Made by a program: the position numbers and the translations under genes. From NCBI GenBank assembly GCA_963514005.1, contig OY740806.1:19778001-19842000 (forward strand): a stretch of 64,000 nucleotides of DNA, read 5' to 3'. The notes beneath the pieces were generated by a model that did not search any database, had not been told where the DNA came from, and was given only the letters and a program-made list of their open reading frames with translations. Source of the DNA: Raja brachyura. Lineage: Eukaryota. Positions 1-47,229 of the stretch are shown in pieces. Each line of letters starts with the position of its first letter. Within the stretch, counting starts at the first letter, position 1.

Positions 1-324
1 CACTTTAATTCCCAATTCTACGTCTATTCTGACCTGTGCATCAGTGGCCTGCTCCACTCCCAGTAGTGACGCCTGACATAAACTAGAACAACATCTTATC
101 ATCTGTTGAGGTACTTTTGCAATTTTCTGGAATGAATATTACGTTTTCCAACTTCACATACTGCTCTCCTATTGTGTTCTTATGTTCCTTTCTCAAACAG
201 CTTATTTGAACAGTCATGCTCCTTAATATCTGATCTTTCTTAAATTATCTCCATTGTCTTGCCCCTCATTCCTCCCTCCAGCTCTGCTTTGAAAACTGCC
301 AACCCTGCACTCCAGTAGAGTTAC

Positions 325-1498: not shown

Positions 1499-1825
1499 AA
1501 TTAACGTTGAGTGTTATGTGTTGCATTATCCACTCTTTGCTTGTTGCATGAAGGACCTGACAAGTAAAAACTGTCCTGTGGTCTTGCAAAGTGGGAGTAA
1601 AACTAATTTGACTTGTTGCGTCAAATGTGCCATCAGAGTTCCTGGTTGGGGAGAGTTTTGTGGTAATATTAACATCTGATTTTGTAGCTTGAGTGTCGTG
1701 AGGATGTTGCCATTGCATTGTGATGTTCTCAGGATAAAATCCCCATGCATGGCAGTCCAAAACAGATGCTTTCTCTGCTATTAAATCTCCCTGAGTCATT
1801 AGAATTTTTGGTGTAGATTCTGGGA
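1499..1825 (-). CDS. Ig C1-set domain exon of gene A (B7-H6/tapasin/SIRP-like C1)
   Basis: Open 327-nt phase 1-1 exon; acceptor tgttatttgttacag, donor gtaagt; LDCHAWGFYPENITMQW...NSDGTF...FTCQVLH has the C1-set C, GFYP, W, DGTF and CxVxH motifs. Confidence 0.88.
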
Positions 1826-2059
1826 CTGTAACAAATAACATGAAACAAAGTTATATGTTGCGCTACATACTTACATACTTATCCTTTCGTGCTAAATTAA
1901 AAACAAAAACAAAGCATGTTAATTAGCATTTATCCACTTAATGTATATAGGTCTGAAGAATGGTCTTGACCTGAAACATCACCCATTCCTTCTCTCCAGA
2001 GATGCTGCCTGTCCCTCTGTGTTACTTCAGCATTGTTTGTCTATCTTTAATGTTAAAAG

Positions 2060-2781
2060 CAATTCCACTTCAGTAAGTGTGAATCAGAAATATTATTTTT
2101 TCCTGGTGATAACCAATGTCTTGTAGACCCACATAAAGGCCTTCCCATGAGTGTTATAAATTGTATCGTTAATTGTTAACTTGGACACAGAGCATGACCT
2201 ATTCTGCATTGGCCCCCTTCGGTCATGGCTGACTATGGGTGTCTCCAGAATGTTATTCCCTATATGGAGGATGCCTGTGCATGGCTTTGTTTAACGTGGG
2301 GAGACTGGTGCACAGACAGCCACCCCACAGTCCTTGACAGATCTGCGTCAGAATCTAGTGGCATGGAGTCCAAGACGACCGGAGACCCTTTGCTACTGCA
2401 GCCTTCATCCGCCTTCTCAGCCGTTGTGACGCTCCACAAATGTCAGCCATCATCCTCCGCCTGTTCCACTGTTGAGGTCTTGGTTGGATTGCTCTTTGCC
2501 CGCTATTGTTTTTGATATTATCTATATTAAACCAAGGACCGCTCAGGGCATATGTAGGAAGGGACACAAAAAGCTGGAGTAACTCAGTGGGTCAGACACC
2601 ATCTCTGGAGAAGGTACAGGTGACATTTCGGGTCTTGACCTCTCAGGACCTTATTCACCATTCAGTTGTGAGTACTGAGGGGAGAAGTAAACAGCCAAGA
2701 TCTTTTACGTCATGGGTCGGTCAACTGTTCAGGAGAGGGGGAGTAGAGTTAGGGCCAAGGAAGGAATAATTGTCGGGATCT
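2060..2781 (-). pseudogene. Decayed C1-like exon split by two insertions (~2197-2506 and ~2545-2640)
   Basis: Acceptor ttctgcttcctacag; translated pieces IPTIIPFLGP...DLGCLLLPSVLTTEW, SGPWFNIDN and SVSKLTINDTIYNTHGKAFM resemble C1 strands; contains stops; 3' boundary approximate. Confidence 0.4.
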
Positions 2782-3919
2782 CTGTAGGAAGCAGAACAAA
2801 TTGACAGTGATCCATTTTTCCAGAACAAATAATACAAATTTTTCACGCAGGAATAGACAGAGTACAAGTTATACATTTAACCTGTTTAGTGCTGCCCCCG
2901 AGTATACTTGGGTCATTGGCCAAAAATGAAAAAAAACTTGGCCGTGAACAGGTTAAACAGAGATGCATTTAACATCAGAGATGGATTTAACAATTGTTGG
3001 TGACCTGAAACTGAACACCCAGGATTAGAATGTGACAAGGAAACCAGAGATATGTCCAAAAAGAAAATGTAACATTCTTGGATGAGGAAGGGGTGTGGCA
3101 GTTTTGAGGAAGGGGGTCAGTGCATTGCAGGAGAGAGAGAATAATCTGCCAAGGAGAAGAGAAAAATGTAAAGACCATGGTAAGAATCTTTCAAACTTTG
3201 TAGATTAAGCAGTGATGAATGAGAATTTTGGAAGCAGTTATAGAGTTATAGTGCTATACAGAATGGAAATAAGCCCTTTGGCCCACCATACCCATTCCCA
3301 ACAAAGTTAGTATTTCGATCTAGTCCCATTTGCTTGCAGCTTACAACCTAAGTGTATGTGCACATAGGTATCTAACCTACAAACGACTAAATTATTCAGT
3401 AGATTACTGAATATAAATAGTAAGATTAAACAAGACCTTACCAGTTTGAAGTTTGATCTTTATTTTATGAGGAGTTACGTTGGTGATTACGTGAAGAAGC
3501 CCCGCCAGTGCGCATGCGCGTCAATCTTCAAAGCAGCGATATGAAAACACAAATAACAGTTATCAAAGTAACATAGTAAGATGAGCAACTTGAGAACTAC
3601 CAGATGACCTTTGTGAGAGGGTTGGACGTGGAGGGCACGTAATCACCAACGTAACGCCTCATAAAATAAAGATCAAACTTCAAACTGGTAAGTTCTCGTT
3701 TAATCTTACTATTTTACTTCGGAGTCACGTGAGTGATTCCGTGAAGGGTTCAAAGCTTTGTGATTTCATGCCGCAGGTTCAAATCCTGGCTTCTCACTGC
3801 ATTGATTGACTCGGAATGAGAAATAATCAATAATGCATTAATGTTGACATTGCATTAAATGCAGTAACACATTTATTTGAATAACAAAAGAACAGTAACC
3901 CCTCTAACCCAGGGGGAAC

Positions 3920-4800
3920 TTAAACAGAACTTAATACGGTATTAGCAAAGAGCCCCGGATCGGCAATCGGCCGATGGTAGAAATGTTGAAAAGCCAACTC
4001 ATTTGACCACCCGGCGGCTGCGAGAATATGGTCGATGGGCAAGTCCATCGCCCTTGCCGCCGACGCTGCTGCTGCCCTAGTGGAATGAGATGTAAAAACA
4101 TCAGTGTTAATACCAGCATCAACCAATACTTGTTTCAACCACCTCGAGATAGTCTGTACTGACACTCTCTTGTGTGACTTCCTATAACTGATAAATAACC
4201 CTGTTTCCATATTTCATAAGGCCCTCGTAGCTTCAATGTATTGCAGCAAATGTGTTTTTACACATAGACATGGATCCGTGGGATATGCCGAAAAAACAAT
4301 CTTGAACTCTGTCACACCTGGCCTGCTCTGTTTGAGTAGGTCATAAATGTAGAACGTAACATTATCTGCAGCCAGTTATCTGTCTGCACTCGTTGTGCTG
4401 ATACCAGAGCCATGAGCATGACCACCTTCATGGTGACTTTGGCCAAAGTCGGAGATGTGACAGGGGTCCACTGACGAAGTAGCTTGAGGACTACGCTTAC
4501 ATCTCAGATTGCCATATATCTGGGTTTAGGAGGTCCGGAATTAAAAATACCTTTCATCAATAGAGAAACAAGAGGATGAGACCCAATAGGATGTTCTTCT
4601 GACCCCATCAATAAGTACGAAGACAATGCACTTCTAGTTGAATTGATTGCACTATAATTCAACCCCTCATCGTAATAGAGTGTTGACGGAAACTCTAGAA
4701 ATACCTGCCGTACAATATTCACTATTATTTTGTACACAGAAAACTTCCCATTTATTTACATAAGAAATATACTGCTTTTGAGTACCCGTCCTCCAGGCTG
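3920..4800 (-). pseudogene. DIRS tyrosine recombinase (frameshifted)
   Basis: SHSTRAAAASAA...ILAAAGWS...FQHFYHRP catalytic motifs; N-terminal part lies in another frame (4504-4737). Confidence 0.85.
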
Positions 4801-4864
4801 CAGTGAACATGTCCACAGTTCGCCCAGACAGTCCTCACCCCAGATATGGCCTTATTAAAACCTG

Positions 4865-6750
4865 CAAATTAACAAATCAATACGGTCATATAACGGATGC
4901 TGTTCGCCAGTTACCGGGTGCACCAGTAAATCCCTTTGTTTGGGAACAGCCATCAGGGGTTGTGTCACCAACTCCAATATCAAAAGGAACCATGGCTAAA
5001 TAGGCCAGTCGGGTATCACCAGCACCCCTGAAGCGGCATCCTGCTTAATTTTAAGCAGACACCGACTTATGAGACAGAATGGTGGAAATGCATATAAAAA
5101 CATACCACCTTAATGTAGCGAGAAAGTGTCAGTCGCTACTGCCCCAGGATCTGGTTCCCATGATACATATTTAGGTAGCTGGTGGTTGAGTCTGGATGCG
5201 AACAAGTCAATATCTGGCCTTCCATATTTGACAACTATATCATTGAATACGTCCTGATTCAACATCCATTCTGTGTTGTCATGGAATTTTCGTGACCTGG
5301 TGTCTGCTACTATATTGAATCTACCTGGTAGATAAATAGCTGAAAGCCAAATGTTATTGTTAATACACCAGGTCCAGATTTGATTAGCCAGTTTGTCACA
5401 AGAAACCGACTTGATTCCACCCATGTGATTAACACAGGCCACTGCCGTAGTGTTGTCAATTTGAAGCTGGTTAGTTGTGTTAGAACAATAAGCCTTGAGT
5501 CCATAAAAAAAACCTCCCAAAAGCTCTAAGTGATTAATTCCCCATGTCTGCAGAAGCAATGTCTCTTCCGCATTCCATCTGCCTTCACAGCTGGAGCTCG
5601 TATCAGTCGCACCCCACCCTAGTGCACTGACATCAGTCTGTCAGACCATGGAAGGCTGTTCAAGCACTACTTTGCTGGAACTACTAGAGACATGCTGAAT
5701 CCACCACTGAAGGTCAGTAACATCATCTGCTGATAACTGCACGGGCCTATTATAATGGCCCGAACATATCCTTAGTGCCTGTTCATTTGCCCTCTGTAAC
5801 TGCTGGTAGTGCAAAGGCACATACTGAACTGCCGGAAAAGCTGCCACTAATTTTCCGAGCAGGCTGACCACCTGTCTAATTGAAGGTTGTAGCTCATTCA
5901 AAAGCTTAATGCATCCATCAATTAGCTCCACTATTTTCGCATTGGGCAGAGTCACTGCCATGTGAATTGAATCAATTGTGAAACCCAAATAGTCAATTGT
6001 TGTAAGTGGTGTAAATTTGGATTTCGCTGGATGAATGATAAACCCCAAAAGTGATTGTAACAACTGCCACAGATGCTTCAGCTAATTCACTTTTGTGTCC
6101 TATAATTAATATATCATCCAAATAAGCCATAACCACATGACCCTGGGCTCTAAGTAGCCCCAGTACTGGCTTTAACAATTTAGTGAATATTCTAGGAGCT
6201 GAAGTTAACCCATTAGGCAGTGCCTTGAATTGCCATAATTGATTCATCCAGGTAAATTTCAAATACTTTCTATCTTCCAAATGAACAGACACTGAGTAAT
6301 ATGCATCTTTCAGATCTATAGTTGCCATATAACATCCTGTGGAAATCAGTTGCTTGGCAGTAAAGAATGCTTCCATTTTGAAGTGTCTATACTGTACAAA
6401 AGGGTTAAGACTTGTCAGATCCAAAATAATTCTACATCCTCCGTCCTATTTCGGTTGGGGAAAAATATTTGACTTAGTGAACCAACCTCTCAATTACTCC
6501 TTAATTACTCAAATTTTCATGTTCAGCCTGAACCTCCATTACTTCTGTTTGTGAAAAATGGAGTGTTCTGCTAGGAACATGCTGGAGGGGCAAATCACCA
6601 TTTGGATCTAACTTAATTCGAATCCCTTGAATAATACTCATGATAAATGGATCTGAGGTAATTTGCTTCGATTCCTCATAGAACAGATGTAATCTACCCC
6701 AAACCTTTGGCTGTGTTGTACTTAATATGTTCCCATGAGAACCTGGCCCA
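4865..6750 (-). pseudogene. DIRS RT-RNase H-methyltransferase-like ORF (fragmented)
   Basis: IDLKDAY, LPNGL, YLDD, INHLEL/IDNTTAV (RNase H), DIDLFAS and YAFPPF (MT-like) spread over several frames. Confidence 0.9.
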
Positions 6751-7949
6751 CCTACCTCCTTGGTAACTGGTGTGACCTGCTGTCCCCAGTTCCGGGTGGG
6801 AAGCCCCACGTTTGTCCGTGTTCCCGCTGCAGATTGCCAACTGCACATCTGCATCGATGGCCGACTTGTTCCTGGTGTAGACCCGGAATCTGCACCTCTT
6901 CTGTATGGATACCTTCTCCTCACAGATTTGCTGACCATCGGTGTCTTAATCAAACCCACCGTTTTTGCTTCGTAATCCAACTCCTTCACGCGTTTCGCGA
7001 GGTCCTCCCCAAAGAGTAAGTTGGGTAGTTGCACATTGGTGGGCTTGCAGAGCGCTGCAAACTTAGGGTTGATGGTGGGCCGAATGGCACTCTTCCTGAG
7101 ACAATTGATCTTAAAGTGGGCGCTGCACAGCAACCCTAGTGACTCTTGATGTGTCTCCGACAGATGCCCCCCATCCATTGTTCTAGTGAACGCCGTGATT
7201 CCTGAACCCAGCAGCTTCAGGATTCCCTGCAGCTTTATTTCCTGGGCACGCATGCCCACGCCCATCTGACCCCATATCACCTGGTTTACTGCCGGTACCT
7301 TTAGCAACACGCAGTTCCTCGGGGACTCGTGCATTTTGGCGGTGTCGTCCATCGTGAGCTCCTGGAGCTGATGGGATACCATATAATTTATCGTGGAGAC
7401 CAGTTCTTCTCCCAGTGGCTCTCCTGACTCTGACGGGACAGCGAATCGTGCTGCCAGAGATGGGACATCTGGCAGCTGCTGTTGTTCGCTTGGCTCCACC
7501 TCACCGTCAGAGTTGGGGTCAGAACTCAGCTGACCCATTGCACGCGCCTCATCAATGAGGGTGCTATCGAGCAGCCCTCTACTAGGTGCTGCTGGCGCGG
7601 CCTCTTCTCCAGCCTGGTGCCGACACCACTCCTCCTCCTGGAGTGTGCCCTGCTGGAGCAACCTGTGCAACAGGTGCTCCATTTGGGATAACTGTTCAAA
7701 AACGATGTCCAGCTCCGGAGGGGAATCTTCCTGGCCCGACTCCCCCGATTCCGTGGGCCTGACAGACTTGTGCATTGCATTACGCCCGACTAGCGCTGGC
7801 TCTGTGCTTTGCAGCAGCAAGTCTGCAGTCGCCCCGCTCCCAGCCGGCAACTGTGCAGGGGTATGAGGCAGCCGTTCACAGACCACACTCCCGCGGCTGT
7901 CTACGGTTTTTGCTCCGGCTCGCCTCTTCCCCTTGCCCGCCTTGTCCAT
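6501..7949 (-). CDS. DIRS ORF1 (gag-like), open and running into the start of the pol region
   Basis: Long ORF; INPKFAALC...LLFGEDLAKRVKEL block is shared with ORF1 of the DIRS at 21-22.7 kb. Confidence 0.8.
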   Translation of the reverse strand: MDKAGKGKRRAGAKTVDSRGSVVCERLPHTPAQLPAGSGATADLLLQSTEPALVGRNAMHKSVRPTESGESGQEDSPPELDIVFEQLSQMEHLLHRLLQQGTLQEEEWCRHQAGEEAAPAAPSRGLLDSTLIDEARAMGQLSSDPNSDGEVEPSEQQQLPDVPSLAARFAVPSESGEPLGEELVSTINYMVSHQLQELTMDDTAKMHESPRNCVLLKVPAVNQVIWGQMGVGMRAQEIKLQGILKLLGSGITAFTRTMDGGHLSETHQESLGLLCSAHFKINCLRKSAIRPTINPKFAALCKPTNVQLPNLLFGEDLAKRVKELDYEAKTVGLIKTPMVSKSVRRRYPYRRGADSGSTPGTSRPSMQMCSWQSAAGTRTNVGLPTRNWGQQVTPVTKEVGGPGSHGNILSTTQPKVWGRLHLFYEESKQITSDPFIMSIIQGIRIKLDPNGDLPLQHVPSRTLHFSQTEVMEVQAEHENLSN

Positions 7950-8913
7950 GGTGCTATCTAAAGAGATACAACACGGCACCACAGCAAAACGGACCCGAAC
8001 TCCAGCTAAGTTTTTCCCACTTACCTGGAGTCTAAATACTTACCACTCTAGGAGCTCTGTTCCTTCCAGCCTCCATGCACCAACGCGGCTGACGTAATGA
8101 CGCGCACGCGCACTGGCGGGACTTCTTCACGGAATCACTCACGTGACTCCGAAGTAAAATTTAACCTAAACGAGTATTGAAATATAGGCAATCCAAATAT
8201 TTGGAAGAATTGTATTTTAAGAATTGTAGAGCCAGCTAATAGAGTCATACAGCGTGCAAACAGGCCCTTCGGCCCAACTTGTCCACGCTGACCTATATGC
8301 CCTATCTACACTAGTACCACCTGCCCGCGCTTGGCCATTAACCCTCTAAACCCATCCTATCCATCCAGCCAATACCTGGAGCAGGTAATAACAATGAAAG
8401 AAGCACAAAATGAATTTCAGTGATAGTCTTCATACCTAACCTATGATTCTTTGCATTAAAACTGCAGGTGCTGGAGATCTGAGTTGAAAATAAAAATATT
8501 GCAAACTCTGAGCTGATCAGGCAGAATCTGTGGAAAAATAAACTTTAATTGTTTCCGTTAAGACAGTTGTAACCTATGCTGCTCAGTGTTGCTACCTTTC
8601 TCCAACTTTATTTGATGATCCCTTTGCCTTGGATACATAACTGCACAGACTACATTTGACAGAATATTCCACAATTAACACGGGTAAATTACTTATTATT
8701 CTTCTTCGTTGGAATGAATTACAATTAATTAGCCTGACTTCCCATAGTGCTTGTTATTAATCTATATCAGTGTATCTAAATGTGGTATGATATGTAACTA
8801 TAATCAATACATATTATAGGAACTGCATTTCTGCAGAATTATATAAATACTTTATCATAAACCTGCATAGAGTGCAGAGACTGGAGATCATCATAGTATT
8901 GCAAATACTTTAC

Positions 8914-9261
8914 CATAAACCTGTATTCGTGTTCCTTGGCCCTTTTCATGAATTGGAGGGAAGACATTTGGTACTTTCACCACACAAGTGTAGTTGTAAA
9001 CAGAGTGACCAAACGATACATTTTCAATCTTCAGTGATACCGTACAGTGCTTGAAACCATCCCAGAGAGGGTGAGGAATGCAGAGCGATTTGTTCGTGTT
9101 GTAAGTAGCATCAGGCCATCCAGGTGATGTCCGATACCATGAAACGCGGAGCCAGGCATTCGCACTTCCATCATAAGTAAATGTACAGTTTAACATGACG
9201 GACTCGCCCCTCCCCACACTGACCAGACGTGGCTGGGTCAACTCTGTGATCAACGGAACTC
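8914..9261 (-). CDS. VJ-type IgV exon (gene A, V1)
   Basis: Open 348-nt phase 1-1 exon; acceptor ttatgttccatcag, donor gtaaag; TQP, LNC, WYR, SLKI, YTC and J-like GQGTRIQV. Confidence 0.9.
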
Positions 9262-9761
9262 CTGATGGAACATAAATAAATTTGTTATTTTTACTTCCAT
9301 TTATAGTCACGCAGAAGCTCACTTTATACAACACCAGTGTGCGGGGATCATTGATCAACGCAAACTTGGTGGGCCAAAGGGCCTGTTTCAAAACTGTATC
9401 TCTAAATTAAACGAAACTATACTAAACGAACCTAAAAGCAATGCTGAACTGGAGACGAAAACAGAATGCTGGAAGAACTCAGTGGGTCAAGCAGCATCTC
9501 GGGGGATGAAGGGATAATATGTTTTGGGTGAGTCCCTGAAACAGGACGTAGGGGGGATTAGAAAATATGACCAGTATGTAGTAGGATGTGGGAGAATGGG
9601 ATGGGGATTAGTTAGCAAAAGGTAGAACCAGATGGGGAGCAGGGAATGTGCAAATGGATCAATGGGTGGGGTGGAAGAGGAGATCAAAGCAGATGGTGGA
9701 AGAGGACCTAAATTTAACATTGGCTTTCCATTGCATCAATTATTTTTAAAATATATAATTA

Positions 9762-11810
9762 TGCATTTAACAAAACAATACGGTCATATAACGGATGCCG
9801 TTCGCCAGTTACCGGGTGCACCAGTAAATCCCTTCGTTTGGGAACAGCCATCAGGGGTTGTGTCATCAACTCCAATATCAAAGGGAACCATGGCTGAGTA
9901 GGCCAGTCGGGTATCACCAGCACCCCTGAAGTGGCATCCTGCTTAATTTTAAGGAGACACCTACTTATGAGACAGAATGGTGGAAATGCATATAAAAACA
10001 TACCACCTTAATGTAGCGAGAAAGCGTCATTCGCTACTGCCCCAGGATCTGGATCCCATGATACATATTTAGGTATTTGGTGGTTGAGTCTGGATGTGAA
10101 CAAGTCGATATCTGGCCGTCCATATTTGACAACTGTATCATTGAATACGTCCTGATTCAACATCCATTCTGTGTTGTCATGGAATTTTCGTGACCTGGTG
10201 TCTGCTACTATATTGAATCTACCTGGTAGATAAATAGCTGAAAGCCAAATGTTATTGTCAATACACCAGGTCCAGATTTGATTAGCCAGTTTGTCACAAG
10301 ATACCGACCTGATTCCACCCATGTGATTAACATAGGCCACTGCCGTAGTGTTGTCAATTTGATGCTGAACATGCAGGTTAGTTGTGTTAGAACAATAAGC
10401 CTTGAGTCCATAAAAAAAAACTCCCAAAAGATCTAAGTAGTTAATTCCCCATGTCTGCAGAAGCAATGTCTCTTCCGCATTCCATCTGCCTTCACAGCTG
10501 GAGCTCGTATCAGTGGCACCCCACCCTAGTGCACTGACATCAGTCTGTCAGACCATGGACGGCTGTTCAAGCACTACTTTGCTGGAACTACTGGAGACAT
10601 GCTGAATCCACCACTGCAGGTCAGTAACAGCATCTGCTGATAACTGCACGGGCGGATTATAATGGCCCAAATGTATCCTGAGTGCCTGTTCATTTGCCCT
10701 CTGTAACTGCTGGTAGTGCAAAGGGACATACTGAACTGCCCACCGTTTTTGCTTCGTCATCCAGCTCCTTCATGCGTTTCGCGAGGTCCTCCCCAAAGAG
10801 TAAGTTGGGTGGTTGCACGTTGGTGGGCTTGCAGAGCGCTGCAAACTTAGGGTTGATGGTGGGCCGAATCGCACTCTTCCTGAGACAATTGATCTCAAAG
10901 TGGGCGCTGCACAGCAACCCTAGTGCCTCTTGATGTGTCTCCGACAGATGCCCCCCATCCATTGTTCTAGCGAACGCCGTGATTCCTGAACCCAGCAGCT
11001 TCAGGATTCTCTACAGCTTTGTTTCCTGGGCACGCATGCCCACGCCCATCTGACCCCATATCACCTGGTTTACTGCCGGCACGTTTAGCAACACGCAGTT
11101 CCTCGGGGACTCGTGCTTTTTGGCGATGTCGTCCATCATAAGTTCTTGGAGGTGATGGGATACCATATCATTTATCGTGGAGGCCAGTTCTTCTCCCAGT
11201 GGCTCTCCTGACTCTGACGGGACAGCGAATCGTGCTGCCAGAGATGGGACATCTGGCAGCTGCCGTTCTTCGCTTGGCTCAACCTCACCTTCAGAGTCGG
11301 GGTCAGAACTCAGCTGACCCATTGCACGCGCCTCATCAATGAGGGTGCTATCGAGCAGCCCTCTACTAGGTGCTGCTGGTGCGGCCTCTTCTCCAGCCTG
11401 GTGCCGACACCACTCCTCCTCCTGGAGTGTGCCCTGCTGGAGCAACCTGTGCAACAGGTGCTCCATTTGGGATAACTGTTCAAAAACGATGTCCAGCTCC
11501 GGAGGGGAATCTTCCTGGCCCGACTCCCCCGATTCCGTGGGCCTGACAGACTTGTGCATTGCATTACGCCCGACTAGCGCTGGCTCTGTGCTTTGCAGCA
11601 GCAAGTCTGCAGTCGCCCCGCTCGCAGCCGGCAACTGTGCAGGGGTATGAGGCAGCCGTTCACAGACCGCACTCCCGCGGCTGCCTACGGTTTTTACTCC
11701 GGCTCGCCTCTTCCCCTTGCCCGCCTTGTCCATGGTGCTACCTAAAGAGATACAACACGGCACTGGCGGGACTTCTTCACGGAATCACTCACGTGACTCC
11801 GAAGTAAAAT
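9762..11810 (-). mobile_element. Partial duplicate of the 3415-8160 DIRS with two internal deletions
   Basis: Near-identical to 4865-8160; deletion junctions at ~10740 and ~11760; same 5' junction and flank as 8160. Confidence 0.92.
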
Positions 11811-12562
11811 TAAACCTAAACAAGTATTGAAATATAGGCAATCCAAATATTTGGAAGAATTGTATTTTAAGAATTGTAAAGCCAGCTAATAGAGTCATAC
11901 AGCGTGCAAACAGGCCCTTCGGCCCAACTTGCCCACGCTGACCTATATGCCCTATCTACACTAGTACCACCTGCCCGCGCTTGGCCATTAACCCTCTAAA
12001 CCCATGCTATCCATCCTGCCAATACCTGGAGCAGATAATAACAATGAAAGAAGCACAAAATGAATTTCAGTGATGTCTTCATACCTAACCTATGATTCTT
12101 TGCATTAAAACTGCAGGTGCTGGAGATCTGAGTTGAAAATAAAAATATTGCAAACTCTGAGCTGATCAGGCAGAATCTGTGGAAAAATAAACTTTAATTG
12201 TTTCCCTTAAGACAGTTGTAACCTATGCTGCTCAGTGTTGCTACCGTTCTCCAACTTTATTTGATGATCCCTTTGCCTTGGATACATAACTGCACAGACT
12301 ACATTTGACAGAATATTCCACAATTAACACGGGTAAATTACTTATTATTCTTCTTCGTTGGAATGAATTACAATTAATTAGCCTGATTTCCCATAGTGCC
12401 TGTTATTAATCTATATCAGTGTATCTAAATGTGGTATGATATGTAACTATAATCAATACATATTATAGGAACTGCATTTCTGCAGAATTATATAAATACT
12501 TTATCATAAACCTGCATAGAGTGCAGAGACTGGAGATCATCATCGTATTGCAAATACTTTAC

Positions 12563-12910
12563 CATAAACCTGTATTCGTGTTCCTTGGCCCTTTTTATGA
12601 ATTGGAGGGAAGACATTTGGTACTTTCACCACACAAGTGTAGTTGTAAACAGAGACACCAAATGATACATTTTCAATCTTCAGTGATACCGTACAGTGTT
12701 TGAAACCATCCCAGAGAGGGTGAGGAATGCAGAGCGATTTGTTCATGTTGTAAGTAACATCAGGCTGTCCAGGTGATGTCCGATACCATGTAACGCTGAG
12801 CCAGGCATTCGCACTTCCATTATAAGTAAATGTACAGTTTAACGTGACGGACTCGCCCCTCCCCACACTGACCAGACGTGGCTGGGTCAACTCTGTGATC
12901 AACGGAACTC
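12563..12910 (-). CDS. VJ-type IgV exon (gene A, V2)
   Basis: Open 348-nt phase 1-1 exon with canonical AG/GT; 9 aa differences from V1. Confidence 0.9.
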
Positions 12911-13424
12911 CTGATGAAACATAAATAAATTTGTTATTTTTACTTCCATTAATAGTCCCGCAGAAGCTCACTTTATACAACACCAGTGTGCAGAGATCAT
13001 TGATCAGCGCAAACTTGGTGGGTCAAAGGGCCTGTTTCCAAACTGTATCTCTAAATTAAACGAAACTAAACTAAACGAACCTAAAAGCAATGCTGAACTT
13101 GAGACGAAAACAGAATGCTGGAAGAAAGCTGGACCCTCAGTGGGTCAAGCAGCATCTCGGGAGGCTGAAGGTATAATATGTTTTGGGTGAGTCCCTGAAA
13201 CAGGACGTAGGGGGGATTAGAAAATATGACCAGTATGTAGCAGGATGTGGGAGAATGGGATGGGGATTAGTTGGCAAAAGGTAGAACCAGATGGGGAGCA
13301 GGGAATGTGCAAATGGATCAATGGGTGGGGCGGAGGAGGAGATGAAAGCAGATGGGGAAGAGGACCGAAATAAGTATTGAACTATAAGGCAATCTGAATG
13401 TTTGAGAGAGTTGTATTTTAATAA

Positions 13425-15020
13425 CTAGACTAAGCAGACCTGTTGGGTCCCTGTTACACGGGAGGCCTGGTCTCCCAACGCAACCTGTTCCCCAATGCAA
13501 TATTCCACCACTCACCCATTCCCCCAATGCAGCCCGTCCCCCCAATGCAATATTGCACCACTCAAGCACAGCCCCCAACTGCTTAGGCACGGCTCATTCC
13601 CCTCATCTCCAGGCAGTTCCTCCCCCTCCTCTTCGCACCCCCTCTTCTTTCCACTCTCCTCCTCCCCTCTCCTATCCCTGCCTCACCTCTCCTTCCCTCT
13701 CCTTTCCCCTACCCTCAGTCATTCCCTCCGTCCATAACTCCGTCTCCATTCCTCCCTACCCCTCTGTCCCCTACTCCTCACATCCCCTATCCCCCCCACC
13801 TGACCTACCCCACTGCCCTCCTCTCCCTCTATTCCCCACTCCCTATCTTCTCCACATCTCTCCATCTATTCCCCCTCCTCCCCCACTCTCCTCACTTTCC
13901 CCCTCTCCCTCCCTACCCCTTCCTCTCCCACAATCCACCCACTCTCCCCCCTCACCTCCGCAGGATCTTTCCCCTCTCCTCCTCCCCCCCCCTTCCTCCA
14001 ATCTCTCCCTTGCCTCTCCCTCCCTCTTCCCCCCCCCCCCCACCCTCAGTCACTCCCTGCCTCCATCCATAAAAAGCAGAATCTGCAGTTCCTTCCTCCA
14101 CAGGTCATTCATTGTCAGCTGTGGTTTAGATCCCGTTGACTTGACGATTGGACCAGTTTGCATCGTTTGTGTGTGTTACTCAAACTCCCCGCGAACTGCT
14201 CGGCCATCCTGCAACCCGACTATCCAACCCTCCCTCTGCCCACTCCGGCTCAGCCACCGTTCGGCACATTCCCATTCTGTCTGACCACCCTCTGCTGCCG
14301 CTCGGCCCGTCCCGTCCCCACCCTGCCCACCCACTATTGTTTTTCTCACCATTATGTAATTACTGATTCTGTTCTATTCTGTTTTGTAGTTTTTGCACAT
14401 TCTGCAAGCTTTGCCATTTTTAATTTCACTGCACACCTTGTATGTGTATGTGACAAATACACTTGACTTGACTTGACTGCCTGCTCGATGCCGTCGCTGG
14501 GCCGCTGGGCGGGGAGGGAATGGAGCTGGTGTTCGTCATAGTAGGCACCACGAGTTTTTGATCAGCTGGTGGAGAAGATCTCCTCCGAGAAGGACGTGAG
14601 GTTGAGTTACCGGAGGTGTGGACCCGGGGGGGGGATGGGTATATGGGACCGCCATTGCCACAGAGGGTGGGCGGGGGAGAGGTGTGAGTGATGAGGGAGA
14701 CAAGACCAGGGCTTCCACTGGGCCTCCACTGCCACTGCCGGTGGTGGGGAGACGACAGACATGGTACTGTGTGGAGGGGAGAGAGGAGTTTGTGAGTGAG
14801 GCGGGACAGGCGCTGTTTTTAAGATTTTTAAACCCTGATAACTTTTACAATATACTACCGATTGGAACGAAACTTGGTGCAATCGCAGCAAAGGAGAACA
14901 GTGAGTAACTGGGCGAAAAAACATAGCATTATCGTGTGCTGTTTTTGTGCAAATATAAAACCTGGGCAAACCGGAAGAACACAAGATCAGAGTTTTAGTT
15001 ATGTATAGATAGAAGATAGA
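13425..15020 (-). mobile_element. Non-autonomous Helitron
   Basis: Minus strand reads A|TCTATCTTCTATCTATAC...GGGACCCAACAGGTC hairpin...CTAG|T; no TSD; empty AT site in the paralog at 49111/49112. Confidence 0.85.
13600..14060 (+). repeat. C/T-rich low-complexity tract inside the Helitron
   Basis: Polypyrimidine runs; the source of the spurious Pro/Ser-rich ORFs. Confidence 0.9.
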
Positions 15021-15737
15021 TTGTAAAACAAACAAATACTTGACACAAATGAAGTAGACACTAACAATGAAAGAAACACAAAATCAAATTCAGTGATGAT
15101 GTTCATTCCTACTCATTTCTTTACATTAAAACTGCAGATGCTGGAAATCTGAATTGAAACGGAAAATATTACAGACTATCAGTTGATCAGGCAGAATTTG
15201 TGAAAAAAAGAAACATTCACTGTTTCTCTTACCATAGATGTAAGCTGTTCTGCTGAGTGTTTCTCCCTTTCTCTGCCATTAGTTTATGATTTTACCTTGA
15301 CTGCATAACTCCATATCCACGAGCAGCAGCTCTACTCAACAACCAAACGTCTGTAGCCTCCTTTTGCTCTGGTATTTTATTTCATTCTTCACATGTTTAA
15401 ATTATAATGGTTGTTTTTAATTGTCTACTGTATATCATGTTGTCACTTGCGAGCAAAGCACCAAGGCAAATTCCTTGTATGTATACATACTTGGCTAATG
15501 AAATTTATTTAATTCAATGACCGGCTACATTTGACAAAAATATCACAATCAACAGTGCTGAATTACTTCTCGTCGTTCCTGTTTGAAACACATTACATGT
15601 AATTAGCCTGGTTTCCAATGGGGTATGTTTCTTATTAGTGTATATCGCTGTTTCTGAATGTGGTATAATATGCAAATAAAATTAATACGCACATACTATA
15701 GAAACTGAATTTTTACAGAATTATATAATTACTTTAG

Positions 15738-16000
15738 CATAAATCTGTATTTGTGTTGCATCACCCTTTTTATATGATGGAGTGAACACACCTGGTATCT
15801 TCACCTCGAGTGTAGTTATAAACAGAGTGACAAACAGAACATTTTCTTCAGTGATACTACAGGATTTGAGGGGGTGAGGAATGCAGAGTGATTTGTTAAT
15901 TTGGTAAGTAGCATCAGGACACTCCCTGTGATGTCCGATATCAGGAAACACTGAGCCAGGCATCCACACTTCCATTATAATAAATGCACAACTTATCACA
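15738..16000 (-). pseudogene. Decayed VJ exon (gene A)
   Basis: PDATYQINKSLCIPHPL...VKIPGVFTPSYKKGDATQIQIY is homologous to the V exons; indels, donor GT changed to CT, 5' part missing. Confidence 0.85.
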
Positions 16001-18524
16001 AACTAATTGGGTAAAATACAGAGCTCAATGCTCAGCCCAAATGTATTTGTTTGAAACAAGGAACTGCACATCCTGCCAGAGATAGGTGGTACAATGGGCA
16101 AAGGGGTTGATGATGGGGAGATCAAACCAGGTATGGGAGAAGGATCTGAATTGAAGATTGGCTTTCCATTGTATCAATTATTTCTCTTAAATAATATATT
16201 TGCCTTTTTCAGATTTAATGTTATGTTGGTTTGTGATGCAATGCTTTGCCTGAATTTGTTTCATTTGCGGACACCATCAGATGTATCTGAATGTTGCTAT
16301 TATGATCCTTGGCTGATAATGACTTCAAGTTCTGAGGTGACTGCTAAGATCATAAGTTCATAAGTGAAAGCAGATTAAGGCCATTCAGCCCATCACTGCC
16401 ATTCAACCATGGCTGATCTATCTCTCTCCCTCAACCCCTTTCTCCTGCCTTCTCCCTATAACGCCTGACACACATTTTAATCAAGAATCTGCCAATATCC
16501 TTAAAAATATCCACTTCTAACTTTTATTGTAGCTATTAATAAATGCCATAATATTGTTTGAAAAAATGTACATTACAACTTAAAATATCTAATCATTGTA
16601 CTATCTTGCAGCAGGAGTTGAATCCTTCTCTGGTTCTCAATGTATCTGGTGCAAATTAAACTCTCAGCCTGTCCCCTGCTCCAAGAGAACTTTGTATGAC
16701 TTTGCACAATAAATCACCCATTCCTTCTCTCCAGAGATGCTGCCTGTCCCGTTGAGTTACTCCAGCATTTTGTGTCTATCTTTCGTTTAAACTAGCATCT
16801 ATAGTTTCTTCCTACAACGGACTTTGCATGATTATGGATGATTTGTTTAGATTACTACGATCCACTTTAATTATCAGTTCAATCACTAATAATTAATGGC
16901 ACTTTTTTTTTTAAATTGCATTTAATGTGCCTGTTGAGCACAGCAAGTAGAAAAGTCATTGTTCCATTCATAAACTGTTCATACGACAAATAAAAGCCTC
17001 TGAGTCTGGAATTTGCATGTTCTCCCTATGAACTTATGGGTTCCATCTGGGCACGTCAGTCTCCTCCCATGCCTTAAAAAAATGTGAAGGTTGGTAGAAA
17101 GAAATCAAAAAAATGTAAGTTCTTGAAAATCTGAAATAAAAAGTGCTTGAGAAACTCAGTAGGTCAGGCAGCATTAGTGAAAATACAGGCAATGTTTCAT
17201 TAGAAACTGTTTGCAGTTTTATTAAAAGAGTAGCAGACCCAAAACATTGACCGTTTCACTTTCCACGGATACAACCTGACTCACTGGGCTTCTTTTTGTT
17301 TTTATATTAGTGCGGATTACTTGGTTAAATAGTCACAGGATATAGATTAGTGATAGATGATTCCACCACTAATCCACACCTTGCCCCCAGAGTGTAGATG
17401 AATGGTAGAATATAGAATGGGGACTGGGTAGTTGATGTGGCAAATAAAGTGGTTTACAGGAGGATCATTTTAGGAATAGGATCCTTATTATTGGGGTGGA
17501 CACTTTGAAATGAAGGGTCTGTTTCCATGTTGTTTCACTCAACAGTAAAACAAGTAAAATTCACATTGCATCATCACCTCTGATTCAGATCAATTTTCTG
17601 AAATCTCCGTCTTCAGGAAAAGCCATTTTCTTCTTCCTTGTGGAAGACGGCACACAGCTCTGTGGAGAACTGAACAATCAGAAATGAACCTGTAGCCATT
17701 TGTATTGGGTAGAAGGCAAACTAAATAGACCTTAGGAGTGTCGGAAAGAACTGCAGACGCTGGTTTAAATCGAAGGTAAACACAAAATGCTGGAGTAACT
17801 CAGCGAGACAGATCTCTGGAGAGAAAGAATGTGTGACTGTTTCGGGTCGAGTCCCTTCTTCAGATACCATTTAGACATTTCCTGTGCTGGTTTTTGAGGC
17901 AGTCAGTTATTGGTGAATGTTTTTCACATGTTCTCAATATCACACTGAAATTTGTTTAAAATTATTAATGTTTTGTTTAAAAATTAATTCCATAGAAATG
18001 CATCATAATAGCTCACTAATTTAGTTATTAATATACTAATTAATTATTTGCCATTTAATCTGTAAACTCACCTCACAATTTTTGAACACCTCATGTTTTA
18101 GCTTTCTCTGCTCAAAGCAGAATAATCTTAATGTTTTTAATTACATTCAAATCTTCAATTAATTCTGAGGTTCAACCAAGTAAATAAAATCCCATTTCCA
18201 AACTTTTCATTAAAATTCAGACATTTTGCATTGTAAATTCCCTCAGTCATGCAGCCACAGCCAATGAACTTACAAAATGGCAACTTTCCTTCTCCGGCTG
18301 TTCTGACATGATGCCTCAGCAAAGATAGAGGCAAGCTGCTCAGGTCCCTGCTACGGAGATCTAAGCTGCTTCTAGCAATTAGCTTCTGTAAGTCTCCCCA
18401 CAGACTGATCAAATAATCACACCACTAACACATTGGCTTTTGTTAAATGTTTGTGATCATTTCAATCTATGAGCTGATTCCATAATACACAAGATGAAAG
18501 AAGGATATTAACCAAGACACTGAC

Positions 18525-18588
18525 CTGTTGAGTATCTCTGCTCCAGTAGGAACACCATCAGTTGCAATAAAATGTTTCCTGCCAACAT
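18525..18588 (-). CDS. Signal-peptide (leader) exon of gene A
   Basis: 64-nt exon from ATG to ACAG|gtcagt encoding MLAGNILLQLMVFLLEQRYST(G); phase 1 joins the V exons in frame; identical coding copy at 59173-59236. Confidence 0.8.
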
Positions 18589-43570: not shown

Positions 43571-44402
43571 CTCTTGTTCCTCAAGAAATACAGACTTTTT
43601 TCAGGGATACACCAGGAAATTGGGTTTCTGCAAGTGAGCTGAGCAGAAAGATCTAACTGCCCTCTGTAAAACTATATTGTGCTCAGAATTCAGAGGTAAT
43701 TATGTTGTCTTTTTGGCTATTAACATTTTCCAGAGAGTCACTTTTGGCCAATCTGCCTTGGTTCCTGTGTTGCTTTGAGTTCCTAATGAGAAAGAAAAAT
43801 AGCAAAGTTGTGAGGAATAAGTTCCCAAATTAATCTGTGATGCTCAATTAAGAACCACACAGGAATATAAATCCAGAGTGATTATTCTCAGCTTCTTCCT
43901 CAAACACACAACCAACTGTCACTCCACCCAATCCATTTACTTTTTTACTAAAATGCCTTAGTTATTTTACCAATTTGAACATCAGTACAAGCAAATTCTA
44001 CTCTGAGTTTAATGAATTTTCAACTATAAAGAATGACAAAGACATGCCCGTATTTTATGATTTATCTTCTGAAACGTCTTTCAAGTGATCCCTCAGGATC
44101 AATTTTGGACACCCTCTTATCCACACTTTGAAGATATCCAGTTAACCTTCCAAGAGGTAGAGATGACACAAATCTCTAACTGCCTCCATTTTATCATTCT
44201 ATTTATCTTCTATGCACCTCTGGCCAAGTTACTCCCAGTTTACCTCCAGTTTTCTCAGCGTGACCCGGATGTGTATATAAATGAAACATCGGAAGTTAAA
44301 TGCAATTACAAAATGATTTAATTGCAAGGGAATCTGAGTACAAAGATAGACACATTTGGTTCCAATTGCATACGAGTCAGATGGGACTGCATCTGAAATA
44401 TT

Positions 44403-45404: not shown

Positions 45405-47229
45405 AGTGTTTGCAACTTTTGGTACATTTTCTGTCCATCATCAAGACCGTAAGAAAATTACTCGCTATCTGCACCTGCCGCTGCTGACATTAGCCTGTGA
45501 TCTGACAAATCTTTCATCTGAGTCTTTTTTCCTTTCAGATGGGGCTGTTGCAATGCTCTCTGTCCAGCCCATGGGCTTCTCTCACCTGTGGTTCAGCCAC
45601 ACCATGGTGTTAAGCATTTGGTCTTACTCTAAACCTTATTCCCTGTATTGTGTATCTATACACTGTGGATGGCGTGATAGTAATCATGTATTGTCTTTCT
45701 GCTCATTAGTTAGCTTTTCACTGTACCCTGAGTCTGAGCTTCAAAATTCCACAAATCCACACTGCAGATTATCTCCTTGCTGTTATAAACTTGCTTACTA
45801 CTTAATGCATATTATTGGAGAAAAAATGTTCATCCATCATTTATATAAAAAGGATAAAAGGCTATTTTAAGGCTTACCTCCATTTGCACAAGTAGTTCCG
45901 ATCTATACAATAAAAAGAAGGACATATTATTAGGGAAATCCACCCATACATGTCATTTTTTTCATCTGGAATCTGATTTTCATAATATAGAAAATGTGTT
46001 TTTATTCAATGGTTTGACTTCAGCCCAACCTATCAATGCTGACCGAGATGTCCCATCACGGTAGTCCCAATTGCCTGGCCGAGATTCCTCTAAACGTTTC
46101 CAACCTATGTACCTGTTGAAATGTTTTTGAAGTGTTGCTATAAAATGTGTTTGGACAAGTACATGTGTGGTGCTTTTTGTTTACATTGATGCAATAACCC
46201 CCCAGAATCCTTCACCTCCACAATCCTGCTGACTGCTACTATTTGTATAACCTTGCTGATTTTTCCAAATTTTCAACAGGGAAATTCTATTTAAGAATCC
46301 TTCCTCTTAGCGATTTTTCAATGTCAAAAAGGAAAATATTAACTAATGGTGAGAAAGTTAGGCATGATTTCACATGGGATATTTTGTAGGTCTTTGTGAC
46401 TGAAGTGGCCTGTTTAGAACTGGACATAACTTTACAACAGACATCGATATTAACTATTGTGAGCACCGTGACTACACTGTAAGATTCCTATGTTACCTTG
46501 CCCTTCGAAATCATTACTTGTCAATTTTTATCCACTTTTTTTTTCAAAAAAAAAAAAAAAAAAAAAATTATCCACTATTAAATTCCTTATTCCCATGCAA
46601 GATCAGCTTGTTGATAATATTTCAATTTCCTTTTTTCTAGTTCAAAACTCTGCATTTCAAAAATCAACCCATTATCTGCAACTTTCTGGATGATTAATAT
46701 TTAAGTTTACCATCAACCTTTCAAATGATCACTTAATTTGACTCGACTATTCCACACCGAGTAGAATGCTCATCCATCATTTCTGTAGGGCCATCTCTCT
46801 GATTATTGCATGTTGCCGCACTCTATTCAACTGTAATAATGGAGCTGACCATCGTAGGAATAATTTATTCCATAGGTATCGTACCTTGAATTATCTTGTC
46901 ATTCAAATTATTTTACTTAAATAAATAATCACATCAAGTGGGGAATGTTTAGGAAAGAACTGCAGATACTGGTTCAAATCAAAGGTCGACACAAATTGCT
47001 GGTGTAACTCAGCGGGACAGGCAGCATCTCTGGAGGCACAAAATGCTGATGGACAGTCTGAAGAAGAGCCTCAACCCGAAACGTCACCCATTTCTTCTCT
47101 CCAGAGATGCTGCCTGGCCGAGTTACTCCAACATTTTGTGTCTACCTAAGTGGTGAATGTTAATAGCTATTAAAACCTCTGCTTCACATTTGTTTGTTTA
47201 CCAGTTAATTTGTCTTTCCTGCAGCAGAG

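What the first reader, a model, noticed from the sequence alone, without database searches (positions are those of the whole stretch)
1499..18588. Non-rearranging VJ-C1 antigen-receptor-like IgSF gene reconstructed from splice sites
Seen: a leader exon, 348-nt V exons ending in a germline J-like GQGTRIQV followed directly by a donor, and a 327-nt C1-set exon. All are on the minus strand with compatible phase-1 junctions, and I saw no RSS. Known: VJ plus C1 is the architecture of Ig/TCR chains and SIRPs, and non-rearranging VJ-C1 genes are candidates for the pre-RAG antigen-receptor ancestor. Inference: the V resembles the CD28/CTLA-4/NKp30/TMIGD2 class and the C1 resembles B7-H6/tapasin C1, so this may be an undescribed chondrichthyan receptor family.
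Basis: partly seen in the sequence, partly recalled or inferred. Interest (0 to 1): 0.85.

Follow-up and report, generated by a model that had tools for sequence, protein, structure and literature searches.

The report
Skate V-C1 paired-receptor genes, non-rearranging
The exons are real and most likely form a germline-joined (non-rearranging) immune-receptor gene of an unnamed shark-and-ray family that resembles mammalian SIRP, with a duplicated V exon and a second, V-only sister gene upstream; no RNA data could confirm the splicing.

Summary
On the minus strand there are a 64-nt leader exon (18588-18525), a decayed V, two intact 348-nt V exons ending in GQGTRIQVY plus a GT donor (12910-12563, 9261-8914), and a 327-nt C1-set exon (1825-1499). 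All junctions are phase 1, and I found no RSS.

The gene is not an orphan. It belongs to an elasmobranch family with a V(J)-C1-I-set-TM layout. Databases predict these genes under mismatched names (Siglec-10 to -14, MAG-like, sialoadhesin-like, and SIRP-alpha-like in paddlefish). I found no paper describing the family.

The family has two forms. One has ITIM/ITSM tails. The other has a true C1 domain, a transmembrane Arg and a short Tyr-free tail. The window's C1 belongs to the second form (100/100 support). Its V domains instead group with skate ITIM-form V domains, as expected of paired receptors.

It has an identical leader (59236-59173), an intact V, a TM(Arg) exon, a 25-nt exon and a tail exon, but no C1 or I-set exon.

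V-to-C1 splicing rests on shark and paddlefish gene models only, because no RNA run was available. The CD28/NKp30 resemblance is not supported. Other pieces of this genome already carry scan notes on SIRP-like VJ-C1 families.

The parts
18525..18588 (-). Gene B leader exon (first part of a split leader), 64 nt, phase-1 donor GTCAGT
   Evidence: Sequence read. An identical copy lies at 59173-59236. The two copies match at 106 of 107 bases including flanks, inside a duplicated block that is 91.6% identical.
15739..15979 (-). Decayed V pseudo-exon of gene B: 5' half missing, frameshift, donor GT changed to CT
   Evidence: tblastn gives two pieces in different frames, covering V residues 29-47 and 49-115. 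Sequence read. No Pfam hit.
12563..12910 (-). V2 exon, 348 nt, germline VJ (ends GQGTRIQVY), phase 1 at both ends
   Evidence: Pfam V-set E = 1.9e-8. 92% amino-acid identity to V1. Present in DNA contigs of two organisms from two studies.
8914..9261 (-). V1 exon, 348 nt, germline VJ, phase 1 at both ends; the V exon nearest to the C1 exon
   Evidence: Pfam V-set E = 1.6e-8. 83% identical to the V of Rhinoraja longicauda XP_078282742.1. Covered by DNA contigs of both organisms.
1499..1825 (-). C1-set exon of gene B, 327 nt, phase 1 at both ends, with the GFYPENITMQW and FTCQVLH hallmarks
   Evidence: Pfam C1-set E = 1.5e-12. 68% identical to Hemitrygon akajei XP_072885644.1. Model pLDDT 80 with seven strands A-G. 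Falls in the Arg-TM-type clade with 100/100 support.
3920..7982 (-). DIRS-like tyrosine-recombinase retroelement in the V1-to-C1 intron; a truncated copy at 10008-11763 lies between V2 and V1
   Evidence: ORFs with Pfam RVT_1 (E = 1.6e-14) and Phage_integrase (E = 1.8e-6). The self-comparison shows the tandem duplicate 4869-9713 against 9767-13371.
59173..59236 (-). Gene A leader exon, identical to the gene B leader
50514..50861 (-). Gene A V exon, intact, 348 nt, 83% amino-acid identity to V1
49836..50077 (-). Decayed V pseudo-exon of gene A, about 90% identical in DNA to the gene B pseudo-exon region
47202..47291 (-). Gene A transmembrane exon (QFPVRFVTVPIFVTTVIFLQLCCRKDKLT), with an Arg near the outer end and phase 1 at both ends
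   Evidence: tblastn with the tails of P0035 and P0004 (E = 1.4e-5 and 0.004). Sequence and splice sites read.
45878..45902 (-). Gene A 25-nt exon (RNYLCKW), which shifts the phase from 1 to 2
   Evidence: It is the only AG-N25-GT candidate with an open frame, a Cys and a pyrimidine tract between the TM and tail exons. It matches DRYGPCNCR of P0004.
43683..43782 (-). Gene A tail exon (NSKQHRNQGRLAKSDSLENVNSQKDNIITSEF, then stop), Tyr-free
   Evidence: tblastn E = 3e-6 (P0035 tail) and 9e-5 (P0004 tail). Sequence read.

Best explanation
Gene B (18588 to beyond the window's start, minus strand) is a non-rearranging type I membrane receptor gene.

Shown here:
- A split leader.
- One or both of two germline-joined VJ exons.
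- A true C1-set exon.

Inferred from orthologues and from unverified scan notes on the neighbouring window: an I-set domain, a transmembrane segment with an Arg near its outer end, a 25-nt Cys-rich exon and a short Tyr-free tail.

The gene is the activating-type member of an elasmobranch family of V(J)-C1-I-set paired receptors. The other members carry ITIM/ITSM tails.

Inferred mechanism:
- The V domain binds a still unknown ligand.
- The membrane Arg couples to an acidic ITAM adaptor of the FcR-gamma / CD3-zeta / DAP12 kind.
- The ITIM-tailed paralogues, whose V domains are kept about 80% identical, deliver the opposing signal.

Gene A, 25 kb upstream, is a tandem sister with the same leader, V, TM and tail exons but no C1 or I-set exon. 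Its product would be a V-only, NKp30-like receptor.
For: - Exon anatomy, phases and splice sites.
- Domain types.
- Relatives joining V directly to C1, then I-set, then an Arg-bearing TM:
  - Pristiophorus japonicus UPI00398ED3AC has V-C1-I-TM(Arg)-short tail with ...GPGTRLHVD-V-PPSPPAISITQE at the junction.
  - Hemiscyllium and Chiloscyllium models join a partial V to C1.
  - Paddlefish XP_041090950.1 has the same architecture.
- The window's C1 is 68% identical to a stingray C1-I-TM(Arg) protein.
- The C1 falls on the Arg-TM side of a 100/100 split from the ITIM-type second domains.
- The window's V domains are closest to skate ITIM-type V domains (83%, 77-80%). An AU test rejects a clade of Arg-type V domains (p = 0.005) but not a skate clade (p = 0.38). 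This is the pattern of V homogenisation between paired genes.
- ITIM/ITSM tails (VSYADIVI, TIYAVV, SEYSVV) are seen in P0002, P0005, P0033 and P0054.
- Gene A places the same leader and V type upstream of Arg-TM, 25-nt and tail exons in consistent phases. This ties the leader/V type to the Arg-type 3' exons.
- Both V copies are present in DNA of two organisms.
Against: - No RNA run holds the C1 exon, so no splice junction was observed in this species.
- The only batoid model of the C1-I-TM part (Hemitrygon) has a transposon-derived N-terminus instead of a V.
- The V1-to-C1 intron is 7 kb and holds a same-strand DIRS element.
- It is unknown which V exon is used. The 11 nonsynonymous against 2 synonymous differences between V1 and V2 do not differ from neutral drift.
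- The I-set, TM and tail exons of gene B lie outside the window. I know them only from first-stage notes.
- Adaptor coupling and ligand are inference from how mammalian Arg-TM receptors work.
Confidence: 0.65

Rival explanations
1. Gene B is a decaying or rearranged copy. The V exons are not spliced to the C1 exon. Either the C1-I-TM part is transcribed on its own, or the whole locus is a pseudogene littered with retroelements.
For: - No RNA evidence.
- A 4-kb DIRS element in the V1-C1 intron and a truncated one between V2 and V1.
- One V pseudo-exon.
- The stingray model of the orthologous C1-I-TM part has no V.
- dN/dS between V1 and V2 is compatible with neutrality.
Against: - All five exons in the window keep open frames, canonical splice sites and compatible phases.
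- The leader is 100% conserved between genes A and B inside a 91.6% identical block.
- Both V exons are intact in two organisms.
- Shark and paddlefish relatives join V to C1 at the same codon.
Confidence: 0.2
2. It is a relic of the pre-RAG antigen-receptor lineage, a third UrIg-like gene more closely related to Ig/TCR than to innate paired receptors. This is what the first reader proposed.
For: - Split leader, single-exon VJ and true C1.
- The V's best solved matches are Ig lambda V regions.
- The family profile's V-C1 part aligns colinearly with UrIg2 (113.8 bits) and Ig light chains.
- Such relics are known from elasmobranchs (PMC12227049).
Against: - The UrIg2 score is the sum of three weak C-domain matches for the single exon (16-19 bits each).
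- The third domain is I-set, and the family carries ITIM or Arg-TM signalling parts typical of innate paired receptors.
- SIRP-alpha matches the V-C1 unit as well as the light chains do.
- No linkage to the MHC or to the Ig/TCR complex could be tested.
- V trees are unresolved.
Confidence: 0.08
3. It is what the database names of its relatives say: a Siglec/MAG-type lectin or a nectin/CADM-type adhesion molecule.
For: - Automatic names of relatives.
- Atlas neighbours are Siglec-, nectin- and CADM-named clusters.
- The best structural matches of the C1 model are second domains of Necl-4, nectin-4, nectin-1 and PVR, at Z 11.4-12.3.
Against: - The V has the ordinary B-F Cys pair with the core Trp (C25, W41, C92), not the Siglec arrangement.
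- Pfam scores the second domain as C1-set (48 bits) well above C2-set_2 (22 bits).
- MAG and Siglec-8 match only the C/I part of the family profile.
- The structural list is a tie, with SIRP-gamma, MHC II and Ig C domains all at Z 10.3-11.4.
- The names disagree with one another.
Confidence: 0.05

Closest known systems
SIRP family (SIRP-alpha, -beta, -gamma)
   Same: - A non-rearranging VJ-type V followed directly by a true C1 domain.
- Paired design: ITIM-tailed members, and short-tailed members with a basic TM residue, with near-identical V domains.
- SIRP-alpha aligns colinearly with profile positions 21-221 (92 bits).
- A paddlefish relative is auto-named SIRP-alpha-like.
   Different: - The third domain is I-set, not a second C1.
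- The V has an extra Cys pair (C60, C72).
- The basic residue is an Arg at the outer end of the TM, not a mid-membrane Lys.
- There is a conserved C-terminal S/T-x-F/L.
- No orthology was shown.
UrIg / UrIg2 of elasmobranchs (PMC12227049)
   Same: Non-rearranging single-exon VJ with a split leader followed by C1 domains, found in sharks and rays. UrIg2 is the top-scoring solved chain for the C1 exon and the best solved chain matching colinearly over the V-C1 unit.
   Different: - UrIg has V plus three C domains and is secreted.
- UrIg2 has nine or more C1 domains.
- Here there is one C1 plus an I-set domain with paired-receptor signalling parts.
- Per-domain similarity is generic (16-19 bits).
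- Linkage to the MHC or to the Ig/TCR complex is untested.
NKp30 (NCR3)
   Same: Gene A's predicted product (one VJ-type V, a TM with an Arg, a short tail) has the NKp30 architecture. By established knowledge, an Arg-bearing TM suggests CD3-zeta/FcR-gamma-type coupling.
   Different: - No sequence relation was detected. NKp30 chains are in the PDB but are not among the V's matches.
- Gene A has no stalk.
- Gene B has C1 and I-set domains.
Nectin / Necl (CADM) family
   Same: A three-domain V - C1-like - I/C2 ectodomain and one TM. These are the nearest structural matches of the C1 model and of the Atlas model of the sawshark relative.
   Different: - The second domain scores as C1-set by sequence.
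- The V is lambda-like with a J motif.
- The tails carry ITIMs, or are short behind an Arg-bearing TM.
- No class II PDZ motif of the nectin type.

Membership tests
Unnamed elasmobranch V(J)-C1-I-set paired-receptor family (NCBI 'Siglec-10..14-like', 'MAG-like', 'sialoadhesin-like') | V domain with LNCTF...W...C-IP...GF..C...YNYTC.VKVP..PP...KGQGT.IQ.Y | tested here: met
   83% identity to Rhinoraja, 48-58% to five other 50%-identity clusters, E = 2.9e-58 to 1.6e-27. Invariant columns listed.
Unnamed elasmobranch V(J)-C1-I-set paired-receptor family (NCBI 'Siglec-10..14-like', 'MAG-like', 'sialoadhesin-like') | Second domain is C1-set of the Arg-TM subtype (GFYP..I...W; DGTF.ATSQ; C.V.H) | tested here: met
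   68% to Hemitrygon and 55-56% to Pristiophorus. 100/100 split from the ITIM subtype.
Unnamed elasmobranch V(J)-C1-I-set paired-receptor family (NCBI 'Siglec-10..14-like', 'MAG-like', 'sialoadhesin-like') | Third I-set domain, TM with Arg, 25-nt Cys exon, Tyr-free tail ending S/T-x-F/L | tested here: inconclusive
   For gene B these exons lie outside the window (notes s1-881319, s1-881368 and s1-881354, which I did not verify). Gene A has the TM(Arg), 25-nt and tail exons but no I-set exon.
Unnamed elasmobranch V(J)-C1-I-set paired-receptor family (NCBI 'Siglec-10..14-like', 'MAG-like', 'sialoadhesin-like') | V and C1 spliced into one mRNA | not testable with these tools
Rearranging antigen receptors (Ig/TCR) | V and J separated in the germline and flanked by RSS | tested here: not met
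   The J-like motif is inside the V exon and is followed by a splice donor. No RSS-like site in 64 kb.
SIRP | V-C1-C1 ectodomain | tested here: not met
   The third domain of family members is I-set (Pfam).
SIRP | Orthology or closest sequence relation to SIRP V and C1 | tested here: inconclusive
   SIRP-alpha scores 92 bits over V-C1, comparable to Ig light chains at 79-86 bits and below UrIg2 at 114 bits summed. No tree including SIRP could be built from tool-given sequences.
UrIg / UrIg2 | VJ followed by three or more C1-type domains; linkage to the MHC or to the Ig/TCR complex | tested here: not met
   One C1 exon, then I-set in relatives. Linkage was not testable.
NKp30 (NCR3) | Detectable sequence relation of the V to NKp30 | tested here: not met
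   Not among the best 60 solved matches of the V. No match at E = 10 for the F-G half.
CD28 family (CD28, CTLA-4, ICOS, CD28H, PD-1) | Single V, stalk Cys, Tyr-based tail motifs (PMC11599192) | tested here: not met
   C1 plus I-set follow the V in gene B. The tail is Tyr-free in gene A and in orthologues. No CD28-family chain among solved matches.
Siglec | V-set with the Siglec Cys arrangement, followed by C2-set domains | tested here: not met
   Canonical C25...W41...C92 in the V. The second domain is C1-set. Sialic-acid binding was not tested.
Nectin / Necl | Second domain of the CD80-like C2-set_2 type | tested here: inconclusive
   By sequence, C1-set 48 bits against C2-set_2 22 bits. By structure, nectin/Necl second domains lead but are tied with C1 domains.

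The most novel reading that the evidence does not exclude
The family is a third surviving non-rearranging VJ-C1 lineage, next to UrIg and UrIg2, with a lambda-like V. In this lineage germline V exons are used as interchangeable cassettes: all are 348 nt and phase 1 at both ends. V2 and V1 (and possibly the V of gene A) would be spliced alternatively or in tandem onto one C1-I-TM(Arg) body. Exon loss would give a V-only, NKp30-like form. That would be receptor diversification by exon choice rather than by RAG.
Probability: 0.12. Interest if true: 0.8.

Novelty: new variant of a known kind. Interest (0 to 1): 0.5.

Why it matters
Non-rearranging genes that join a VJ-type V to a true C1 domain are the material from which Ig and TCR are thought to have arisen. 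Few are known (SIRP, UrIg, UrIg2).

This locus adds a family found across sharks and rays, with a paddlefish relative, that has a lambda-like VJ and a genuine C1 domain. It is organised as activating and inhibitory pairs whose V domains are homogenised.

The window shows the family's exon modularity directly. It holds a duplicated V exon, a V pseudo-exon, and a sister gene reduced to V-TM.

The current database names (Siglec, MAG, sialoadhesin, CADM, SYG-2) are misleading and would hide the family from comparative studies.

Tried and rejected
- RNA evidence. The one run search, made with the C1 exon, found six holders from two organisms, none on record as RNA. Read laying could therefore show only DNA contigs. 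They confirm that both V copies exist but say nothing on splicing.
The loci of the stingray, skate and shark relatives and their neighbours could not be read, and synteny was not tested.
- Every exon was searched by reference on its own.
- The V model had pLDDT 64 with the G strand unresolved, so I ran no fold search on it.
- The C1 fold search gave a tie between nectin-type and C1-type domains. It does not discriminate.
- CD28/CTLA-4/NKp30 resemblance: no support from searches of solved chains.
- Word-index homology searches returned few hits. None was this genome's own protein.
- Papers on shark NCR3, PRARP and the first UrIg report are not held. Searches for a description of this family found none. 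This does not prove that none exists.
- No C1, I-set or ITIM-tail exon was found elsewhere in the window, even at E = 5.
- dN/dS of 1.7 between V1 and V2 rests on 13 differences and is not significant. I do not claim selection.

Full report
**What is in the sequence.**

- Leader exon: it starts at the ATG at 18588 and codes MLAGNILLQLMVFLLEQRYST plus one base before a GTCAGT donor. It occupies 18588-18525.
- V exons: two 348-nt exons lie at 12910-12563 (V2) and 9261-8914 (V1). Each begins after a ...catcag acceptor with the last residues of a split leader (G-VPLIT). Each has the V-set hallmarks (LNCTF...WYR...YNYTC). Each ends KGQGTRIQVY plus G, directly before GTAAAG.
- C1 exon: a 327-nt exon lies at 1825-1499 between a strong acceptor and a GTAAGT donor.
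- Domain calls: Pfam calls the V exons V-set (E = 1.6e-8 and 1.9e-8). It calls the last exon C1-set (E = 1.5e-12, 48 bits, against 22 bits for the CD80-like C2-set).
- Phases: all junctions are phase 1.
- RSS: a scan for recombination signal sequences over both strands of the whole window found none, against 0.9 expected from shuffles.

- The third V-like stretch (15979-15739) is a pseudo-exon. Its 5' half is missing, it is frameshifted, and its donor GT has become CT.
- V2 and V1 are a recent tandem duplicate. A segment of about 4.85 kb (4869-9713) was copied to 9767-13371 with an internal deletion. The segment holds most of a DIRS-like retroelement (reverse transcriptase and tyrosine recombinase), the V exon and its upstream intron.
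- The two V exons differ at 13 bases, 11 of them nonsynonymous and mostly in the CDR1- and CDR2-like loops. With so few changes, a dN/dS of 1.7 is not distinguishable from neutrality.
- DNA contigs from two organisms in two studies cover both copies, so the duplication is not an artefact of this assembly alone.
- One contig of the assembly's own organism carries V1-type bases at four V2 positions. This could be an allele or a conversion tract.

**A second gene.**

- The leader is repeated exactly at 59236-59173, inside a segmental duplication (15020-20729 against 49111-63890, 85-92% identical).
- Downstream of it lie an intact V exon (50861-50514, 83% identical to V1) and a V pseudo-exon (50077-49836).
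- Next comes a 90-nt transmembrane exon (47291-47202, QFPVRFVTVPIFVTTVIFLQLCCRKDKLT).
- Then come a 25-nt exon (45902-45878) and a tail exon ending ...NIITSEF-stop (43782-43683).
- All have good splice sites and consistent phases.
- No C1, I-set or ITIM-tail exon lies anywhere else in the window.

This gene A would therefore encode a V-only receptor with an Arg in its membrane segment, which is the NKp30 type of architecture. It also ties this leader and this V type to the Arg-type 3' exons.

**Relatives.** An exhaustive HMMER search with the V1 exon found six 50%-identity clusters of elasmobranch proteins (E = 2.9e-58 to 1.6e-27). After those came only weak hits, led by lambda-like V regions.

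- The relatives are automatic gene models named 'sialic acid-binding Ig-like lectin 10/11/12/13/14', 'myelin-associated glycoprotein-like', 'sialoadhesin-like', 'synaptogenesis protein syg-2-like' or 'uncharacterized'.
- They come from Rhinoraja, Leucoraja, Narcine, Mobula, Hemitrygon, Heterodontus, Rhincodon, Stegostoma, Chiloscyllium, Hemiscyllium, Scyliorhinus and Pristiophorus.
- A paddlefish relative is named SIRP-alpha-like.
- Their architecture is V, then C1 or a diverged C1, then I-set, then TM (Pfam).

**Two forms.**

- ITIM form: the tail is long with ITIM/ITSM motifs (VSYADIVI, TIYAVV, SEYSVV), and the second domain has lost the C1 hallmarks.
- Arg form: it keeps a true C1, has an Arg near the outer end of the membrane segment, and has a short Tyr-free tail with a Cys-rich juxtamembrane part and a conserved S/T-x-F/L end.

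**Where the window's exons belong.**

- The C1 exon is 68% identical to the stingray Arg-form protein and 55-56% identical to the sawshark one.
- In a tree of second domains it falls on the Arg-form side of a 100/100 split.
- The window's V domains are instead closest to the skate ITIM-form V domains (83% to Rhinoraja).
- An AU test rejects a tree uniting the V domains of Arg-form genes (p = 0.005). It does not reject a skate clade (p = 0.38).

C1 follows gene type and V follows taxon. This is what is seen in paired receptors whose ligand-binding domains are homogenised.

**Is V spliced to C1?** This is the weak point.

- No public RNA run holds the C1 exon.
- Support comes from relatives only. 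The sawshark model reads ...GPGTRLHVD-V-PPSPPAISITQE, the epaulette-shark model ...GPGTQLHVV-V-PPSPPAISVTQE, and the paddlefish model ...GEGTRLEVY-A-PPSSVSIYQS.
- This is the junction predicted here, with the same split Val codon.
- Against it, the only batoid model of the C1-I-TM part has a transposon-derived N-terminus and no V.
- I did not build, search or fold a joined model. Exons were handled one by one by reference.

**Comparison with known families.**

- A profile of the family aligns colinearly over V plus C1 with UrIg2 (113.8 bits), SIRP-alpha (92.3 bits) and Ig lambda light chains (79-86 bits). The third domain matches I-set domains of DSCAM, titin and contactins.
- For the single C1 exon, the UrIg2 score is the sum of three weak matches. 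The best single-domain match is B7-H6 (37 bits), ahead of Ig constant domains, MHC and SIRP-gamma (about 31-36 bits).
- The V exon's best solved matches are Ig lambda V regions.
- Its F-G half, which to the eye recalls the CTLA-4/CD28 'PP' loop, finds no CD28-family or NKp30 chain even at E = 10.
- The C1 model (pLDDT 80, seven strands) is structurally tied between second domains of nectin/Necl/PVR and C1 domains of SIRP-gamma, MHC II and Ig (Z 10.3-12.3). This does not discriminate.
- The Siglec names are not borne out. The V has the ordinary Cys-Trp-Cys core and the second domain is C1-set.

The closest known design is SIRP: a non-rearranging VJ-C1 ectodomain with ITIM and basic-TM partners. 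It differs in the I-set third domain, the extra Cys pair in the V and the position of the Arg.

UrIg and UrIg2 (PMC12227049) share the split leader, the single-exon VJ and C1 domains, but have many C domains and no paired signalling parts.

**Mechanism.**

- Shown: exon structure, domain types, family membership, the two signalling forms in relatives, and the discordant V and C1 histories.
- Inferred: the V binds a ligand.
- Inferred: the Arg-TM form signals through an acidic ITAM adaptor, as mammalian NKp30, NKp46, OSCAR and LILRA do.
- Inferred: the ITIM form recruits SHP phosphatases.
- Inferred: the conserved S/T-x-F/L end may bind a PDZ protein.
- Unknown: whether V2 and V1 are both included, chosen alternatively, or one is skipped. 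Both are symmetric phase-1 exons with the same splice sites, so tandem inclusion would stay in frame.

**Novelty.**

- The gene models of the family are public, but under names that contradict each other.
- The searches I could run found no paper describing it. Several relevant papers are not held.
- Other agents of this scan have noted SIRP-like VJ-C1 receptor families on other pieces of this same genome. I did not test whether those are the same family.
- I rate this a new variant of a known kind (paired Ig-like receptors of the SIRP type), of moderate interest.
- The pre-RAG-relic reading remains possible but unsupported until synteny and proper domain trees are available.

Noticed in passing
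window 43683-59236 (-): A second, previously unflagged gene (gene A): identical leader, intact V, V pseudo-exon, TM(Arg) exon, 25-nt exon and tail exon, with no C1 or I-set exon. It predicts a V-only, NKp30-like receptor of about 200 aa.
   Followed up: yes
window 3920-7982 (-) and 10008-11763 (-); also 21022-25652 (+): DIRS-like retroelements with gag-like, reverse transcriptase and tyrosine recombinase ORFs. One sits in the V1-C1 intron in the gene's own orientation, and a truncated copy was carried along in the V-exon duplication.
   Followed up: partly
window 12596, 12655, 12656, 12663: One 790-nt DNA contig of the assembly's own organism (run X1) carries V1-type bases at four V2 positions (K105E, V85H and one silent). 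This suggests an allele or a gene-conversion tract between the two V exons.
   Followed up: partly
window 9052 and 12791: The only exon differences seen in the related organism B are nonsynonymous: K70E in V1 and T40S in V2.
   Followed up: no
gene A tail 43683-43782; relatives P0004, P0035, P0037, P0039: The Arg-form tails all end in S/T-x-F/L (ITSEF, KITEF, MTSEF, TTSEL, ITSKL), which looks like a class I PDZ-binding motif. There are also Cys clusters next to the membrane (LCC...C), which could be palmitoylation sites.
   Followed up: no
window 36648-41626 (-) and 52396-56235 (-): Two LINE-type retrotransposons with endonuclease/RT ORFs. The second is inserted in the leader-V intron of gene A and accounts for much of its extra length compared with gene B.
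   Followed up: no
P0003 (Heterodontus francisci isoform X5), P0006 (Chiloscyllium punctatum): Annotated relatives that lack the I-set domain (V-C-TM-ITIM) or go from V straight to the ITIM tail. This hints that the phase-1 domain exons of this family are skipped in some isoforms or models.
   Followed up: no
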